Shown piece after piece: positions 1 to 59,137 of a stretch of 64,000 bases of DNA. Below the pieces are notes generated by a model. That model ran no database searches and had not been told where the DNA came from. It was given only the letters and a program-made list of their open reading frames with translations. Source of the stretch: Aplysia californica (lineage: Eukaryota); contig NW_004797572.1 of NCBI RefSeq assembly GCF_000002075.1, positions 421,828-485,827 of the forward strand. The letters are read 5' to 3'. How positions within the stretch are numbered: the stretch's first letter is position 1; every line of letters begins with the position of its first letter. The position numbers and the translations under genes were made by a program.

Positions 1-3000
1 CTGGGGCAGGCTCGCTCCAGTCTTTGATAGATGGTCTGCAGTCTCATTCCCTGGTACTCCAGAATGGCCAGGCACCCACTGCAGTGTGACCCGGACGCCA
101 TAGATGATTGGTTCTCTGTTCTTGGGTGGGTCAAACTCCTCAAGTAGTTTTGTTGCTTCTTGCATAAAGTAGGTCTTCTGGATGCATGTTCTTGGTTCCC
201 ACTCATCTGCCATTTTCCTGTTTTCGTTCGTGTCTTCTAGCCGCTCAAATTTTTCATAGGTGTTGAGTGTGGCACTCTTTCTTCTGAGGTCCAGTGATTC
301 TATGTTGGTGTGGATTTTGTAGGCGCTTGTAGGCGTGGTCTTCATCGCGCCAGAAACAAATCTGAGTGCTTGGTTCTGTACTCTGTCAAGCTGTGAAAGG
401 GAGCTTTGGCTGGCTATGGATTGTAGTGGTATGTAGTCAATCACAGATCTGACATACCCTATATAAAGTTGTCGGAGGGTTGCTTTGTCAGCTCCCCAGT
501 TGAGTAATGAAAGGTGTTTCAGGAGGTTTAGTCTGGAGGTGGCTTTCTTGGTCAGCTCCTCTAAGTGCTCTTTGAGAGACAGCTTTCGGTCCAGTTGTAC
601 ACCAAGGTACTTGGGGTAGTCCTCATGGGAGGCCTTCCTCAAGTGTCCTCTGTGAAGAAATCTTGCTGTCACATGACGTCTGGATAGTTCTGCAAGACAG
701 AAAGTTCTTGATCCAACTGTACATCTTTCCTGCTATCCCAAGCTTTTGCATTTTGTAGAACAGTCCCAGTCTCCACACACGGTCATACGCCTGCCTCAGG
801 TCGATGAAGACGGCCACAACATTGTCTTTATCTTGAAAGGCATCGCTGGTCATCTGGGCAAATCTGATGAGGTGGTCAATAGTTCTTTTGCCTTTCCTGA
901 ATCCTGCCTATGATGTGCTGATTGTTCCAGTGTTTTCCATCCACCAGTACAGTCTGTCGTTGACCATTCTCTCGACGACCTTACCCAGGCATGATGTTAA
1001 AGAGAATGGTCTGTAGCTTGAAGGCTGGCTTGCTGGTTTGTCCTTTTTTAGTATCGGTGTGATGTTTGCTTTCTTCCATTCTTTTGGGAGCTGTCCCTCA
1101 TTCCAGGTCCTATTGAAGAAGTCCAGGAGTATCAAGAGTGAAGACTCTGTCAGGTTGAGGATCATCTCATTGGTGACGTGGTCTGGTCCAGGGGCCTTTC
1201 TCTTTTTACACTTTTTGAGGGCTGCCTTCATTTCCGTCAGATTGAACTCCTCAAACACCTCCAGGTTTGCCTTGGGGGTCTGTTCTGCCCTTTTGGTCAG
1301 CTGCTTTATTGTGTGGCTCAGTTTGTTCTGGTTTCCTTTCTTGCTGATGCTAGCAAAGTATTTATTCATAACCTCAGCTCTGCATGTTTCTCCTTTCTCA
1401 GTTGGTTTCATTGGGGTGGGGTTTTTCCTTCTTTTTGTACCTGAGAGATTGGTAAGCAGGTTCCAGGCTTTCCTCCCGTCCTTACGCAGGTCTAGTTCTC
1501 CACAGTGTTCTCTCCATGTTTGTCTTTTCGCACTTTTGGTCTTCAGTTTTACCTTGGCAGTCAGGTAGTTATAGTGCTTTCTGTTTTCGGCTGTTGGGTT
1601 CTTCTCAGCACGCCGTCTGGCTTTCTTTCTGGCCTTGGTCAGTTGTTCCAGTTCTTTGTCCCAATAAGGGCAGAACTTCTTAAGGTTCCCTCTTGGAATC
1701 GCTTCCTTAGCAGATGTCTTTAGTGCTGTGGTGATGTCCTTGTAGCACTCATCAATTGGGTTGGTCGTGCATACATCCAGGAGTCTACTTTCAAATTTCT
1801 CTTAGTCGAGCTCCCAGTTTGTTTTCTTGTAGTTCCAACTGCGTCTTATGGGGTTGGTCGGTTCTCGTTTCCTGTTGCTGGATATTTGCAGTAGGATTGG
1901 GCGGTGGTCACTTCCTATGTCATCAAGGACAGTCATGGAGCAGTGCGGGTGACGGCTCTATGAAGTAGGGTGGGAGGTGTCTTGTCATTCTGAAGTGAAA
2001 TGAGGCTGCTTGATCTCAGTAGTTTTTCTAGAACTGTTCCTGTCAAGTCTGTATCACTGTAACCCCACAGTGGAGATTGAAATCTCCCGCAAGAATGGTA
2101 TATTTATGGTCTGTATTCGGGAAGTTCAGCTCGAGAGTAGATCTCGGTGAGCAGTATACATTGTAGAAGGTGTAGGTTGTTCCATCTGACTGCTGCACAT
2201 TCACTTCCTGTATGTCAGTCTCGTCATCGGTTTCTGGGTGAGAAACCTCAGCGGTGATGTCATTACGGATGAAGGTTGCAATACCTTGACATCTGGTGCA
2301 ATTGCAGTGGTACATTGAGTAGCCTGTCAAATGGAGCTCTATCCGCTTGGGTAGTTGGGTTTCCTGTATCAGGGCTACATGAATTCTTAAGTCTGACAGT
2401 GTCTTTGCAAGCTCCATTTTCTTGTTCTGTATTGATGAGATGTTCAGTATATTCAATGTCTGTGTGTCTGTAGGTTGGGGGGGTCTGTAGTGTCTGTGTG
2501 TTGCTTGTGGCCCCTATACCTGCAGTGTGGGTCCTATGTAGCTGACTTGTCACTCCCGCCCCCGGGTGAAGGCAGAGAGCGTGGACCTTGATAACCGAGG
2601 TGACATCCGAGCTCGTATAGTTTCATCTGTTGTAGAGGCATTTTATTGGTTTGGGGGTTGTGAAGGCTTGTATGCATCCCTGTAGGATCTCAGGTAGGTG
2701 GTAGTCTTGTCCTGATACTAGCTTGTGCCCAAACATCTTGCCACAAGAGAGCAAAGGTGCAATGTTCACTGTCCTGCTTTCCATCAACCTTCACAGGGAT
2801 TTCTTAGACAGTAGACAACCGTAGGGGGTGTAGGCACACTCTAGTTCTGAGAGATGGGAGCCTCAAAGTGCAACCAATGACAAGTGATCATCTGAGCAGT
2901 CCAGTAAGGGGTCCCATTGAGTAAGGGAGTAAGGGGTAACGCATTCCTTCCACAGTGAGTCGTCTACATCACCAAGCGTAGCTTGTGTTTGCCCAATCCC

Positions 3001-3530
3001 CGCCACCAGCTGTCTCCTGACTATCTGCTATTAACATTTCCGTTCATAGGGCAGAATAATTCGAGGGATGGCCAAATCTACTCAGAGGATCATCACGTCA
3101 TGGGTCAGCGAGCATTTGCCAGGATATCTGTAGGGACGTCATCTGTTTCCAGGCAGCCTATTCCTTACAGCTACAAGGCCTTCTGGTTCTGCGGAGGCAT
3201 CTCACAATGAGTCATCTGGCAGTCTGTGGGTACCATGCCCCGTCTGTAGAGCTCCCACGAGAGGGAGGGAAGAAGATGTCGACAGTGAGTTCCGGAATGA
3301 ACAGGTTGGCCTGCTGTGATGCCAGACCTACCTTCTACGAGCCAAAGGGTCGTTGCTCATTTCGCACCTCACAGGCCTATGGTACCTCCTGGCCAGAGCT
3401 CCGCCTGCAACCCCTACTCCTATGCACAGAGCAAGGGTCCCCAGGCTGCTCGACAAGGACGGGGAGTTGACTTGGTTGAAGCTGGCTTGCCAGAGAGCGT
3501 CCGGGGTTTCACCCTCAACCCTTACAGCCC
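1..3530 (-). mobile_element. Ingi/Nimb (I-group) non-LTR retrotransposon, degenerate and internally deleted; APE endonuclease - RT - RNase H; 3' end lies outside the window
   Basis: Minus-strand pieces: APE (2043-2456: ALIQET, NVYCSP, ILAGDFN); RT (KAPGPD, SYRPFSLTSCLGKVVERM, FIDLRQAYDRVW, EEGLP); thumb (PKYLGVQLD..WGAD..LRQLY); RNase H C-terminus (VTLQWVPGHSGVPGNETADHLSK, 1-100). Frameshifts and stops present. 5' boundary set by the ribozyme G at 3530. Confidence 0.9.
3399..3530 (-). ncRNA. HDV-like self-cleaving ribozyme (degenerate) at the LINE 5' end
   Basis: Manual fold: P1 GGGCUGU/GCAGCCU, P2 CUCC/GGAG, P3 CCG/CGA, L3 UCCUUGU, P1.1 CC/GG, 11-bp P4 stem, candidate catalytic C at 3407. 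Confidence 0.7.
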
Positions 3531-3736
3531 ATGTACCTATATAAATAGACCTACTTTCATCTGATCTCACCTGTTTGTTTTCATAAGAGATTTACGACGC
3601 ACGCAACTGCATAAAGCCATATGAGCGAGCGAAAAAAAGTTGGTTCTATTCGCAAGTTCACTGCACAGCCCGATTCTGGTCAACACCTCTACTAAAATGC
3701 TAAAATACTAAAAATTAGGTGCAAATAAAATCTTAA

Positions 3737-4740
3737 CTCATTCGCTACATATTATTTTCGGCTTGTGGACGAATTTTTTTCGGAAGGGCGAAATGAGATG
3801 ATGACTAGCGCTCAGTTCAAAGGTCTGTGGGGCCACAAATTCAAATAAATATCAACATATCATGTACCAAAATTTTCAGTATGCTTTGTTGAATACATCT
3901 GTCAGGTTTATTCGTGTATTTTTCAACTTTTGTCTGCAAAAGGCGATTGATAATAAATGCAAAACAATTTTGCTTGGAGGCGGATAAAATTTGAAAATAA
4001 AAAATAAATCATCTTTGCTGAAACTAAAAAAAATATGTTTGCACTTAGCAAAATAACCATAAATGAATATAGAACTGGGAATATTGAAAAATTTGCAGTT
4101 ATTTACATGATACATTCCATAAAATTTGTACATTTGGATCATAACATCCGATATTTTTTTTTTTTAAAATGTTTTTTTTTAAATCTTGAAAAAAGGACAA
4201 TAAGTATGCATTCACAAACAGAAAAAAAAACACTCTCTATCTCATATGAAATTATTCAGAATACATGTCTTCAGTGGTACTTTTTGTGTAATTTCACCAA
4301 AAAGTAGTGATTTTGGGGAGAAAAAAATATTTTGACAATTTAGATCTCAACCTAGATCTAGCAAAAATATTGATTTACTGGCAATTTGAGTCCAATAGTA
4401 TCAATATTATAAAGAAGAGTCATACATTTCTTTAGTGAGCAAAATAATGATACATTTTGTTGTGTAAAAGTACTAAAACTGGTGTCTGGGCTATAGTTCG
4501 GGCATCCCGATAAAACAAAGTCGTATAACTACGAAATCGCGTTTCAAAACTGAATCTAAACTTCTGATTTTCAGTGGAAAGCCTGGACCGGAAGTCAATG
4601 TTATATTATAACCTTTATTTTAACATGAATATGAGGATTGGAATAAAAATTTAAGCTAGAATTACAGGACGGTTCTCGAGCCGAGCGTACGGAAGACACT
4701 GTCGCCGCACCGCTGCCCACGGCTCGGCACAGCTAATGAG
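3737..4740. mobile_element. Non-autonomous TTAA-type (piggyBac-like) DNA transposon
   Basis: TTAA on both sides (3733-3736, 4741-4744); TIR CTCATTCGCT / CTCATTAGCT; a related partial copy lies at ~8285-8760. Confidence 0.7.
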
Positions 4741-57300: not shown

Positions 57301-59137
57301 TTCGCTGAGAAAATATGAATTGATGTACATGGTCACAAGTGCCAGTGTATAATTATATTAGAACTGATTAATATGCACCTTATATAAAAACAGTCTCTTG
57401 TCTTTTCCCTATTGTGCTTTTCTGATACTGTTTTTTTTTGTACAGGGTAAAAGTTCCTCTGAGACTTGGTATGCTGTGCTGGATGATGGCACAAACTATT
57501 GCAATCTGCACAACCTTATTACAGGTAAGCAAAATCGCTCAAGTGCTTGAACGTTATTTCTTACCCTTATTTTCGTCAGAGTGTCATTTAAGTAGCCATC
57601 TCCATGCATAGCAAAGCACTTTGTCTCCGTACTAATGCCACTCGACAATTTTTGGGAAAACCAGATCTAATCAATGTTAAAGTGGTCACCTATAAATAGC
57701 ACAGATATGAATCCTACAGGTATGTGAAGTCCCATGAAACCGCAGCTAAAGAAAAGCAACTTTACTCCCAAAACAGACCCTTTGTTTGCAACTCTCTGTG
57801 ACATTTTGGATAAAATGACACATTGTTATGTCCAAAAATTTAAGAGTTGATGCCCAAAGGGTTCATGTACTAAAGAAAACCAATTGCTCCTAAGCAGACT
57901 AACAATGGGCACATTTAATGTTATTTCCAAGTTTTGTGTGGTATTTGTGATTGCTCTGTTTTCCATTTTGTTTTAAACTATCGTGACAAAATATAATAAC
58001 AAAATATAGTTTACTGCAGAGACAAAATTCTCCATTCATTGGATGCAATGTGTGTCCATTCTATTTATATTGATACTCCTCAATACACGCGCGAAGAGAA
58101 TTCTATGTTTCTTTGCTTTTAACACAATGTTGCAAAGCTTGATTTTTGAAAGTCAGTTTTGAGTACCATATCTCGGGCGTTTCTTATGATAGATGATTTA
58201 TTAAGGTGTCAGATGATGCAGAATTTATTAAACTTTAAATTGATATGCCATATGAGTGGGTAATGCGAGGCTTTAACATGATTGGGTGATTACATTTTCA
58301 AGTTTCTTTTGGACGCCTCTGTAGTATATATATGTGTTGTTGACATGTCCATAAGATGTATCTAAGCATGCTCTGGGGGTTGAGAGAGATCAGACAGGTG
58401 GACAGCACTCCTATGGTTATGTGTGTGCATGTAAAGTGAGAGGAGCATGAACATTGTGGGGGTGGAATGTCAGAAGAGAAGCAGATAGAACCGTCATAAA
58501 TTTTTTATCCCCGGCTACTGAAGAGTGATAGACATAGTTTCACCTAATGAGTTTCCTGTTAGTCTGTGGAACCAAACATACCATATAAGCCATACTGCAA
58601 CTTTGTTTTGCAAGTAATACATCAATTGACACAGTCATGCATTTGAACAAATCAGCCTTTTGACACAGTTGGCTCAGTGCCTGCAATTATAAATCTGAAA
58701 AGCTCTCATTGCCACTGAAAGTGAAGGTGTCTGTGGTGTGGGACTTAAGAAATTCGCTATTGCTCACAGAAGGCCTCGATCCTATGTGGGGAGAATTTTT
58801 ACTAAGTATCCGTCTTTTTGCTGGGACATCGTATCCATTTCATCTTGAGTTGGCCCTGACAGGGAGGGTTGAAGCACTCATTCTAAATGATTAAAACTGT
58901 GTCAGTGGGGGCATAAAACACTTACATTTTTAAAGACAAAAAGAATGTCAAGCTGATGACTTCATTGAAACTGAGTTTTACTGTATGCTTGGGAGACAGA
59001 TGATGAAGTTGGTTTTTATGATTCCTTTCTTATTGTCCTCCTCAGGTTCTGGTCTTGATAAGCTTAAACCATACAAGGAGAGCACCAGTAACTCAAAATG
59101 CACCCAGTATTCTTCAGCAAACTGTGAGAAGTACTGA
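51254..59137 (+). CDS. Secreted Cys-rich uncharacterised protein, DUF1499-like, 5 coding exons, 162 aa
   Basis: join(51254-51354,52256-52358,56848-56961,57446-57524,59046-59137) = 489 nt, all GT-AG, phases 2,0,0,1 consistent: MTKSLVLLIVCACIGSSWCGPFEFPFHASCNIDWTFGATCQNVSQIIQAQIQKWSGTSCGSGEKCRYEFVSFDNNILKAKHTTPVKHYADDLTFVFKPNSSLCLVNGKSSSETWYAVLDDGTNYCNLHNLITGSGLDKLKPYKESTSNSKCTQYSSANCEKY*. Confidence 0.9.
52256..52358 (+). CDS. Secreted protein coding exon 2
   Basis: ctcag|(W)TFGATCQNV...GEKCRYE|gtaggt. Confidence 0.85.
52424..52843 (-). mobile_element. tRNA-derived SINE (same family), inverted, internally deleted
   Basis: Reverse complement matches the head, pyrimidine-rich middle and tail of 61022-61512. 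Confidence 0.65.
53524..55205. mobile_element. Non-autonomous hAT transposon, 1.68 kb
   Basis: Perfect 8-bp TSD CTGATAAG (53516-53523, 55206-55213); TIR CAGAGCTG; dense AGTAC/GTACT subterminal repeats. Confidence 0.9.
56848..56961 (+). CDS. Secreted protein coding exon 3
   Basis: ttttcag|FVSF...HTTPVKHYADDLTF...CLVN|gtgagt. Confidence 0.88.
57446..57524 (+). CDS. Secreted protein coding exon 4
   Basis: tacag|GKSSSETWYAVLDDGTNYCNLHNLIT|gtaagc. Confidence 0.88.
58140..58322. mobile_element. Tc1/mariner terminal fragment
   Basis: Ends GTTTCTTTTGGACGCCTCTG|TA. Confidence 0.4.
59046..59137 (+). CDS. Secreted protein terminal coding exon
   Basis: ctcag|GSGLDK...CTQYSSANCEKY*; candidate AATAAA at 59716-59721. 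Confidence 0.88.

What the first reader, a model, noticed from the sequence alone, without database searches (positions are those of the whole stretch)
3399..3530. HDV-like ribozyme fold at the exact 5' end of an Ingi/Nimb-type LINE
Seen on the minus strand: a nested double pseudoknot. P1 GGGCUGU (3530-3524) pairs with GCAGCCU (3449-3443), with a G-U wobble at the putative cleavage G. P2 CUCC/GGAG; P3 CCG/CGA around L3 UCCUUGU (HDV-type UCCUCGY with one C>T); GG for P1.1; an 11-bp P4 (GACCCUUGCUC/GAGUAGGGGUU); C at 3407 in J4/2. J1/2 carries its own multi-hairpin insert (GGUUGAG/UUCAACC enclosing GGGU..ACCC and CUGG..CCAG). Upstream of G3530 the sequence turns AT-rich, consistent with an element boundary. 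Known: HDV-like ribozymes cap R2, RTE and L1Tc/ingi retrotransposons. Inference: this mollusc-type family self-processes its 5' end. This copy has a P3 mismatch and lacks the J4/2 A, so it may be inactive.
Basis: partly seen in the sequence, partly recalled or inferred. Interest (0 to 1): 0.75.

Follow-up and report, generated by a model that had tools for sequence, protein, structure and literature searches.

The report
HDV-like ribozyme capping a gastropod LINE
The first 132 bases of this dead jumping gene (a LINE) fold like the hepatitis-delta-type self-cutting RNA that other LINEs use to trim their own front end; it is a new example of a known trick, and this copy has lost one conserved core base.

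Summary
Observation confirmed; interpretation supported by computation, but cleavage itself is untested.

Evidence for a real ribozyme family:
- G3530 is the exact 5' end of the LINE family. All 30 fetched copies have unrelated upstream DNA, and 26 of 30 start GGGCTGT.
- Two sister LINE families in the same genome (RT piece about 42-52% identical) also start at the predicted cleavage base of an HDV-type fold.
- P1, P2, P3 and P1.1 carry compensatory changes between families: 9 of 15 pairs changed on both sides, 94.7% of cells paired against 74.2% in shuffles.
- The J4/2 motif C-N-R-A-Y and the L3 pattern U-N-(C/U)-N-N-G-U are kept.

- The P3 C.A mismatch is family-wide (29 of 29 copies), not damage to this copy.
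- The missing J4/2 A is copy-specific (A>G at 3404; 22 of 29 copies have CAGAC).

Limits:
- Rfam does not recognise this family.
- RNA reads were too few to show a 5' end.
- The LINE has APE, RT and RNase H; its exact clade (Ingi or Nimb) was not testable.

It is a new member of a known kind. This scan already flagged the same kind of ribozyme on two other pieces of this genome.

The parts
3399..3530 (-). Whole HDV-like ribozyme fold, 132 nt, the first bases of the LINE copy. Predicted cleavage is immediately 5' of G3530.
   Evidence: model R1, 166.8 bits, window 3530-3396. This is the only match in the window.
3524..3530 (-). P1 5' strand GGGCUGU. G3530 is the +1 base.
   Evidence: The family boundary lies here in 30 of 30 loci.
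3474..3520 (-). Peripheral domain inserted in J1/2. It is closed by an 8-bp helix, 3520-3513 with 3481-3474.
   Evidence: the helix is in the MFE and centroid folds. The helix is kept with changes in family 2.
3463..3466 (-). P2 5' strand CUCC.
   Evidence: 3 of 4 P2 pairs change on both sides between families.
3450..3462 (-). P3 (CCG/CGA, with C3462.A3450 unpaired) around L3 UCCUUGU.
3443..3449 (-). P1 3' strand GCAGCCU.
3441..3442 (-). GG of P1.1, pairing with C3457 and C3458 of L3.
3409..3439 (-). P4 hairpin, 11 bp with a 9-nt loop. In this copy C>U at 3434 turns one C-G pair into U.G.
3403..3408 (-). J4/2, GCAGGC here and GCAGAC in most copies. C3407 is the candidate catalytic C. G3404 replaces the conserved A.
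   Evidence: CAGAC in 22 of 29 copies; CAGGC in 3 of 29, including this one.
3399..3402 (-). P2 3' strand GGAG.
2043..2456 (-). Remnant of the apurinic-type endonuclease domain of the LINE.
   Evidence: PF03372, E 4.9e-06.
623..1411 (-). Two broken pieces of the reverse transcriptase (908-1411 and 623-853). The element runs on past window base 1 into an N stretch, which I left alone.
   Evidence: PF00078, E 7.2e-04 and 1.2e-06.

Best explanation
Window 3530-3399 (minus strand) is a decayed copy of an HDV-like self-cleaving ribozyme. It forms the first 132 nt of an APE-RT-RNase H LINE family of a gastropod-like genome.

Proposed mechanism (inferred from the family's known chemistry, not shown here):
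- The element is transcribed, at least partly, as part of longer read-through RNA.
- The nested double pseudoknot folds during transcription.
- The 2'-OH of the base before G3530 attacks the phosphate, with the J4/2 cytosine (C3407) as general acid and a bound divalent ion helping.
- The LINE RNA is released with a 5'-OH exactly at G+1.
- Reverse transcription of that RNA gives genomic copies that all begin at this G.

The folded ribozyme stays on the 5' end and may also protect it or help translation. That is speculation taken from reports on other LINEs, which I recall and did not see here.

This particular copy belongs to a dead element with a broken ORF. It carries A>G at the conserved J4/2 adenine (3404), so it is probably impaired.
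For: 1. Exact 5' end.
- 34 of 39 non-self genome matches begin within one or two bases of G3530.
- All 30 fetched loci have unrelated upstream DNA, except one duplicated pair and (AT)n runs.
- 26 of 30 begin GGGCTGT; the other 4 differ by one or two substitutions.

2. Two sister LINE families show the same coincidence.
- Family 2: 31 of 39 matches start exactly at G1 of GGGGAUC.
- Family 3: 33 of 39 matches start at the first C of a C-run.

3. Covariation on a model-derived alignment of families 1 and 2.
- 94.7% of cells are paired, against 74.2 +/- 2.0 in shuffles (0 of 500 reach it).
- 9 of 15 pairs change on both sides.
- The covariation score is 0.297, against 0.114 in shuffles and at most 0.048 when partners are slid.
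- P2 was not part of the model's structure, yet 3 of its 4 pairs change on both sides.

4. Conserved unpaired core.
- J4/2 reads CAGAC in family 1, CUGAC in family 2 and mostly CUAAC in family 3 (11 of 13 parsed copies; CUAAU and CAAAC once each), each directly before P2.
- L3 is 7 nt with U at position 1 and G at position 6 in all three families. Position 3 is C in families 1 and 2 and U in family 3.

5. A curated HDV-like model (Rfam RF02682) aligns end to end with family 3 at 30.4 bits, E 0.006.

6. The ribozymes lie about 2.0-2.1 kb upstream of the same RT segment in families 1 and 2.
Against: - No cleavage assay has been done.
- No Rfam family reaches its gathering score in the window, and no HDV model hits family 1 or 2 even at E 10.
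- P2 is only 4 bp.
- P3 has a C.A mismatch in all 29 family-1 copies.
- There is no covariation within the family, as expected for dead copies.
- The MFE fold is not significantly stable (z -1.58). That method cannot see pseudoknots.
- The covariation rests on few independent lineages (family 1, 2a, 2b and one variant copy).
- The poly(A) RNA runs gave 0-3 reads per bin on the 5' part and no pile-up of starts, so in vivo processing is not shown.
- A precise 5' end is also what an internal promoter would give.
Confidence: 0.85

Rival explanations
1. The 5' end is set by an internal promoter that starts transcription at G+1. The conserved pseudoknotted fold serves another purpose, such as protein binding, translation or stability, without catalysis. 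It would be an ex-ribozyme or a look-alike.
For: - Precise 5' ends alone do not separate initiation from cleavage.
- P2 is short and P3 is imperfect in family 1.
- Rfam HDV models do not hit family 1.
- In L1Tc the same 77 nt were reported to be both promoter and ribozyme (abstract of PMC3383444), so the two roles can coexist.
Against: - The full HDV-specific topology covaries across families: P1 to the very first base, P2 crossing it, and P1.1.
- The C-N-R-A motif is kept at a fixed distance from P2.
- A structure with another job has no reason to place its first pair exactly at +1 in three families.
Confidence: 0.1
2. Chance: a GC-rich 5' UTR that happens to satisfy a permissive HDV descriptor.
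For: My descriptor finds about 2.45 matches per 190,240 shuffled positions. It also gives one unrelated match on the window's plus strand at about 57909-58102.
Against: A chance match would have to start at the exact boundary base in independent families. The rate is about 1.3e-5 per position, and the helices keep pairing through changes on both sides.
Confidence: 0.02

Closest known systems
L1Tc/ingi ribozyme (L1TcRz in the Pr77 hallmark) of trypanosomatid Ingi-clade LINEs
   Same: An HDV-like ribozyme occupies the first bases of an APE-type LINE RNA, so the element's 5' end is the cleavage site. It is shared by related elements (abstracts of PMC3185411 and PMC4035085, seen).
   Different: L1TcRz is 77 nt long and doubles as a promoter. 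The fold here is 132 nt, with a 47-nt domain inserted in J1/2 and an 11-bp P4.
R2 element ribozyme (and the HDV-like ribozymes reported for RTE, R1, R4 and LOA LINEs)
   Same: Self-cleavage from a co-transcript gives the precise 5' end of the LINE (abstracts of PMC3774820 and PMC3414825; passage of PMC5786205 listing six clades).
   Different: R2 inserts into 28S rDNA and is cut out of an rRNA co-transcript. The copies here are dispersed, with unrelated flanks. Nimb and I are not among the six clades listed in that 2018 passage; Ingi is.
Rfam RF02682, HDV ribozyme from F. prausnitzii (a compact HDV-like ribozyme)
   Same: Sister family 3 aligns over the whole model at 30.4 bits, E 0.006, with matching P1 and P3/L3.
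   Different: The score is below the gathering score of 44. The window's own family does not match at all. The 3' half of that alignment disagrees with my P2 assignment.
Minimal HDV-like ribozymes without P4
   Same: Sister family 2 replaces P4 with a 5-nt linker.
   Different: The window's family keeps a long P4. Family 2 also carries a large J1/2 domain, so it is not small.

Membership tests
HDV-like self-cleaving ribozymes | Nested double-pseudoknot order: P1 5', J1/2, P2 5', P3-L3-P3, P1 3', P1.1, P4, J4/2, P2 3'. | tested here: met
   (coordinates in the parts list). The same order is found in families 2 and 3, with family 2 lacking P4.
HDV-like self-cleaving ribozymes | A P1 of about 7 bp whose first pair involves the +1 base, typically G.U. 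This feature is recalled, not taken from a call. | tested here: met
   7 of 7 pairs, starting with G3530.U3443. Families 1 and 2 both start with G.U. Family 3 uses a C-run/G-run instead.
HDV-like self-cleaving ribozymes | A 3-bp P3 closing a loop of about 7 nt that supplies P1.1. | tested here: inconclusive
   L3 is 7 nt and P1.1 is CC/GG. P3 has only 2 standard pairs plus C.A in 29 of 29 copies. The same position is A-U or C-G in families 2 and 3.
HDV-like self-cleaving ribozymes | A catalytic C in J4/2 in a C-N-R-A context a few bases before P2 3'. The motif is recalled, not taken from a call. | tested here: not met
   This copy reads CAGGC, with G at 3404. The family meets the feature: CAGAC in 22 of 29 copies, CUGAC in 15 of 15 family-2 copies, and C-N-A-A in all 13 parsed family-3 copies (CUAAC 11, CUAAU 1, CAAAC 1; the 14th, L087, did not fit the pattern).
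HDV-like self-cleaving ribozymes | Helices supported by compensatory change. | tested here: met
   9 of 15 pairs changed on both sides, with 0 of 500 shuffles reaching the paired fraction or the score. No covariation within the family.
HDV-like self-cleaving ribozymes | A match to a curated covariance model (Rfam HDV-type families). | tested here: not met
   No match in the window at gathering score. No HDV model at E up to 10 for 3300-3650 or for a core-intact copy, L010. Only sister family 3 gets a sub-threshold RF02682 match.
HDV-like self-cleaving ribozymes | Site-specific self-cleavage leaving a 5'-OH, dependent on the J4/2 C. | not testable with these tools
   Needs a bench assay. The RNA reads were too sparse.
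LINE 5'-end processing ribozymes (R2 / RTE / L1Tc type use) | The cleavage site coincides with the element's 5' terminus in full-length copies. | tested here: met
   30 of 30 loci; 31 of 39; 33 of 39.
Ingi or Nimb clade of non-LTR retrotransposons | One long ORF with APE endonuclease, RT and a C-terminal RNase H. | tested here: met
   The window holds pieces of PF03372 and PF00078. An 80%-identical relative, P0001, has PF03372/PF14529, PF00078 and PF00075.
Ingi or Nimb clade of non-LTR retrotransposons | Placement of the RT inside the clade on a tree with reference elements. | not testable with these tools
   No reference LINE library is available. The only lead is that a paper classifies many Elysia marginata elements as Ingi (passages of PMC11203168), and one named relative here is from that species.

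The most novel reading that the evidence does not exclude
HDV-like ribozymes may be the ancestral 5' cap of the whole RNase-H-bearing (Ingi/Nimb-like) LINE radiation in heterobranch gastropods, and they have been remodelled freely. Three forms are seen here:
- a large J1/2 domain with P4,
- no P4,
- a homopolymer P1 with a C at +1.

The inserted J1/2 domain could then act as an internal promoter, as Pr77 does in L1Tc. The roughly 70-bp 'LINE promoter' heads shared by Nimb LINEs and mollusc LP-SINEs (passages of PMC4758252) could be ribozymes of the same kind.
Probability: 0.2. Interest if true: 0.55.

Novelty: new member of a known kind. Interest (0 to 1): 0.4.

Why it matters
- It adds a mollusc LINE lineage to the elements that use an HDV-type ribozyme to define their own 5' end.
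- It gives three natural, related variants of the fold in one genome: a large J1/2 insert, loss of P4, and a C-run P1. Together they form a ready-made comparative series for asking which parts of the fold are dispensable.
- For genome annotation, the ribozyme gives a base-exact marker of full-length copies of these families.
- It does not change the general picture, which has been established since 2010-2011 for R2, RTE and L1Tc.

Tried and rejected
Steps that led nowhere or gave little:
- Rfam at gathering score on the whole window and at E up to 10 on 3300-3650: no ribozyme match.
- Plain MFE folding of a core-intact copy: it finds the J1/2 helix and P4 but cannot show the pseudoknots. z = -1.58, which is uninformative.
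- Covariation within family 1: none (93.5% paired against 93.6% in shuffles), as expected for copies that decay neutrally after insertion.
- A MAFFT alignment across families 1 and 2: it put the core out of register, so I did not use it. I used the model-derived alignment A4 instead.
  - A4 still contains 6 spurious antisense or partial rows.
  - One of them (L019:1585-1691:+) has letters in the P1 columns and was counted.
- The wider model alignment A2: it mixed in many spurious and weak family-3 rows, so I did not use it.
- Model R1 found nothing convincing in 13 of the 20 upstream loci of other LINE copies. The all-against-all comparison shows that most of these are 5'-truncated.
- RNA reads: 0-3 reads per bin over 3267-3521, in one of three poly(A) runs, with no listed start pile-up. 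This is inconclusive. One contig of run X1 stops matching exactly at 3530.
- tRNA scan upstream of the element: nothing.
- I considered an alternative J4/2/P2 for family 2 (GGCGAAC followed by GUUGG) and rejected it. The CCGY/RYGG pairing has compensatory changes between subfamilies 2a and 2b.

Literature:
- Searches found no report of an HDV-like ribozyme in a gastropod LINE.
- Ruminski et al. 2011 and Webb et al. 2009 are not held and supplements are closed, so their lists may contain mollusc examples that I could not see.
- What I say about those two papers is recalled, or comes from passages of papers that cite them.

Full report
**What is in the window**

- P1: GGGCUGU (3530-3524) pairs with GCAGCCU (3449-3443), 7 of 7 pairs, beginning with the wobble G3530.U3443.
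- P2: CUCC (3466-3463) with GGAG (3402-3399).
- P3: CCG (3462-3460) with CGA (3452-3450). Two pairs form, and C3462.A3450 does not.
- L3: UCCUUGU (3459-3453).
- P1.1: G3442 and G3441, able to pair with C3457 and C3458.
- P4: an 11-bp hairpin, 3439-3429 with 3419-3409.
- J4/2: GCAGGC (3408-3403), with C3407.
- J1/2: a domain closed by an 8-bp helix, 3520-3513 with 3481-3474.

Downstream on the same strand lie broken pieces of an endonuclease (2043-2456) and of a reverse transcriptase (908-1411 and 623-853). The element continues past window base 1. There it shows an RNase H-like motif and then runs into an N stretch, which I left alone. So the fold sits at the head of a dead LINE copy.

**The boundary**

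- A search of the window's own genome (927 Mb) with 3540-3380 gave 40 scored matches of 77 candidates.
- 34 of the 39 non-self matches begin at query base 9-12, which is window 3532-3529.
- I fetched 30 loci and lined them up. The 40 bases upstream are unrelated from copy to copy. The exceptions are one duplicated pair (L019 and L020) and (AT)n runs in L003 and L007.
- 26 of the 30 begin GGGCTGT. The other 4 have one or two substitutions in these seven bases.
- Two copies carry a run of extra G just upstream (L002, L006). Four sit directly after an (AT)n or (ATCT)n microsatellite (L003, L004, L007, L058).

**This copy against its family**

The 29-copy alignment shows four differences of the window copy from the majority inside the fold.
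- G for A at 3502, in the J1/2 domain.
- U for C at 3480, which turns a G-C pair of the J1/2 helix into G.U.
- U for C at 3434, which turns a C-G pair of P4 into U.G.
- G for A at 3404, in J4/2.

The majority J4/2 reads CAGAC (22 of 29 copies). That fits the C-N-R-A context which I recall as typical of HDV-like ribozymes.

The C.A mismatch is present in all 29 copies. It is a trait of a family that nevertheless produced many copies with exact 5' ends.

Within the family there is no covariation (93.5% of cells paired against 93.6% in shuffles). That is expected, because LINE copies decay neutrally after insertion. This test therefore says nothing either way.

**Is the fold more than a lucky pattern?**

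Standard tools do not recognise it.
- No Rfam family reaches its gathering score in the 64 kb.
- No ribozyme model matches 3300-3650 at E up to 10.
- The MFE fold of a core-intact copy is not unusually stable (z -1.58).

I wrote a descriptor for the fold with these requirements:
- a P1 of 7 perfect pairs starting with G,
- at least 2 inner pairs in P3,
- L3 of the form U-N-C...G-N,
- a G after P1,
- C-N-R-A plus 0-2 bases before a P2 of at least 4 pairs.

It matches shuffled sequence about 2.45 times per 190,240 positions. A match alone therefore proves little in a 927-Mb genome. The argument has to come from position and from evolution.

**Sister families**

The RT piece 908-1411 finds many LINE copies in the genome: 150 were scored of 3761 candidates. 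They include groups that are only 39-54% identical. I fetched about 4.3-4.8 kb upstream of 19 of them, plus one long copy of the window's own family. I searched these with a covariance model built from the 29 copies. The model contained P1, the J1/2 helices, P3 and P4, but not P2 or P1.1.

Family 2 (RT piece 42-49% identical):
- The model found its own family twice, and also a second family in L044 (23.2 bits, E 8e-4), L049 and L047.
- In L044 the match lies about 2.03 kb upstream of the RT segment. The corresponding distance in the window is 2.12 kb.
- These copies begin GGGGAUC. 31 of 39 genome matches start exactly at that G, and the flanks are unrelated.
- The helices differ but still pair:
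  - P1: GGGGAUC with GAUCCCU, or with GGUCCCU.
  - P2: CCGC with GUGG in one subfamily, and CCGU with ACGG in the other.
  - P3: ACC with GGU, and in one copy (L072) CCC with GGG.
  - P1.1: AC or GC with GU.
- P4 is absent and replaced by five bases.
- J4/2 reads CUGAC in 15 of 15 copies.

Family 3 (RT piece about 50-52% identical):
- I found it from a weak model match (L046, 7.5 bits) that lies where the homology between copies begins.
- 33 of 39 genome matches start at the first C of a C-run.
- Its fold has these parts:
  - P1: a C-run paired with a G-run, both variable in length.
  - J1/2: short.
  - P2: GACCC with GGGUC.
  - P3: ACC with GGU.
  - L3: UCUUCGU.
  - P4: a hairpin is present.
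  - J4/2: CUAAC in 11 of 13 parsed copies.
- Rfam's model of the F. prausnitzii HDV ribozyme (RF02682) aligns with it end to end at 30.4 bits, E 0.006. That is below its gathering score of 44.

**Formal count of covariation**

MAFFT put the cores of families 1 and 2 out of register. I therefore used the alignment that model R1 makes of 7 family-1 and 10 family-2 copies. On it I counted P1, P2, P3 and the first P1.1 pair.
- 94.7% of 262 cells are paired, against 74.2 +/- 2.0 in shuffles (0 of 500 reach it).
- 9 of 15 pairs have changes on both sides (6 of 500 shuffles reach this).
- The covariation score is 0.297, against 0.114 in shuffles (0 of 500) and at most 0.048 when the partners are slid by 1-3 columns.
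- P2 was not in the model, so the alignment was not fitted to it. It still pairs in 97.1% of cells, and 3 of its 4 pairs change on both sides.

Caveats:
- The rows descend from only a few active lineages, so the number of independent events is small.
- The alignment holds six spurious antisense or partial rows, one of which has letters in the P1 columns.

**Mechanism**

Taken together, the data fit one reading. The LINE is transcribed with upstream sequence, the 5' region folds into the HDV-type double pseudoknot, and it cuts itself just before G+1. Reverse transcription then copies an RNA that starts at that G.

What is shown:
- the fold,
- its conservation through compensatory change,
- the coincidence of +1 with the element end in three families.

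What is inferred:
- the chemistry (C3407 as general acid, a 5'-OH product), which is transferred from what is known of the class,
- the existence of read-through precursors.

RNA evidence was sought and failed. Three poly(A) RNA-seq runs of the same organism label gave 0-3 reads per 51-base bin over 3267-3521, in only one run, with no listed pile-up of starts. A contig of run X1 (probably DNA) stops matching exactly at 3530 (table 8). That only restates the boundary.

**Rival readings**

- An internal promoter that starts at +1, with a non-catalytic structured leader, cannot be excluded without a bench test. It does not explain why the first pair of a crossing pseudoknot should involve the first base in three families, nor why C-N-R-A is kept next to P2. 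In L1Tc, promoter and ribozyme share the same 77 nt (abstract of PMC3383444), so the two readings need not exclude each other.
- Pure chance is not tenable.

**Comparison with what is known**

- HDV-like ribozymes at LINE 5' ends are established for R2, RTE, L1Tc/ingi and others (abstracts seen).
- The element here has the APE-RT-RNase H order. An 80%-identical relative, P0001, shows it in full.
- Its only named relatives come from the gastropods Elysia marginata and Arion vulgaris.
- One paper classifies many E. marginata elements as Ingi (passages of PMC11203168).
- I could not place the RT on a tree with reference elements, so 'Ingi/Nimb-type' remains plausible but unproven.
- My three literature searches found no report of such a ribozyme in a gastropod LINE. 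The two key primary papers are not held and supplements are closed, so a prior listing cannot be excluded.
- PMC4758252 (passages) describes a roughly 70-bp 5' domain shared by Nimb LINEs, an RTE and mollusc 'LP-SINEs', and reads it as a promoter. Whether that domain is also an HDV-like ribozyme is an open lead that I could not test.

**Earlier notes of this scan**

Two earlier findings on other pieces of the same genome describe HDV-like ribozymes at LINE 5' ends.
- One has an AC/GU P1.1, which is my family 2; I reproduced it independently.
- The other is about 130 bases long.
- Both agree with this report and did not change it.

**Verdict**

This is a real feature, a new member of a known kind. 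The window copy is a decayed and probably impaired example. Interest is moderate: the mechanism is familiar, but the three remodelled variants in one genome make a useful natural series.

Noticed in passing
L044:2135-2257 (+), L049:1924-2046 (-), L047:1958-2080 (-), and L064-L075: A sister LINE family whose 5' end is an HDV-like fold without P4 (a five-base linker instead). It has a roughly 70-nt J1/2 domain and an AC/GU or GC/GU P1.1. Two subfamilies differ by compensatory changes in P2.
   Followed up: yes
L046:1945-2045 (+), L060, and L076-L087: A third LINE family whose P1 is a C-run paired with a G-run. Both vary in length between copies (6-17 C, 6-17 G), so the +1 base is C. Rfam RF02682 matches it below threshold (30.4 bits).
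   Followed up: partly
L002 and L006 just upstream of +1; L003, L004, L007 and L058 upstream flanks: Some family-1 copies carry 7-11 extra G before G+1. These may be untemplated or stuttered additions at the 5' junction. Several copies sit directly after (AT)n or (ATCT)n microsatellites, which hints at a target preference.
   Followed up: no
window 3573-3630 and 3726-3900: Just upstream of the LINE lie pieces of very abundant repeats. They are well covered in poly(A) RNA (up to about 128 reads per bin) and have many loose ends, meaning reads from other copies. No tRNA-like gene was found there.
   Followed up: partly
L019 and L020 (contig C469, about 5 kb apart): Two family-1 copies with identical upstream flanks. 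This is a local duplication, not two insertions.
   Followed up: no
L058:2397-5420 (+): The longest open frame of this family seen here (1007 aa). It contains internal tandem duplications in the RT and downstream of it (a 14-aa unit repeated four times), so it is not an intact gene.
   Followed up: no
window 57909-58102 (+): A single match to my permissive HDV descriptor, with no supporting context. It is at the rate expected by chance.
   Followed up: no
L031:4700-6300 (genome contig C302, just before the window's start): The 3' part of this LINE copy is interrupted by a long N stretch. I did not fill it or look it up.
   Followed up: no
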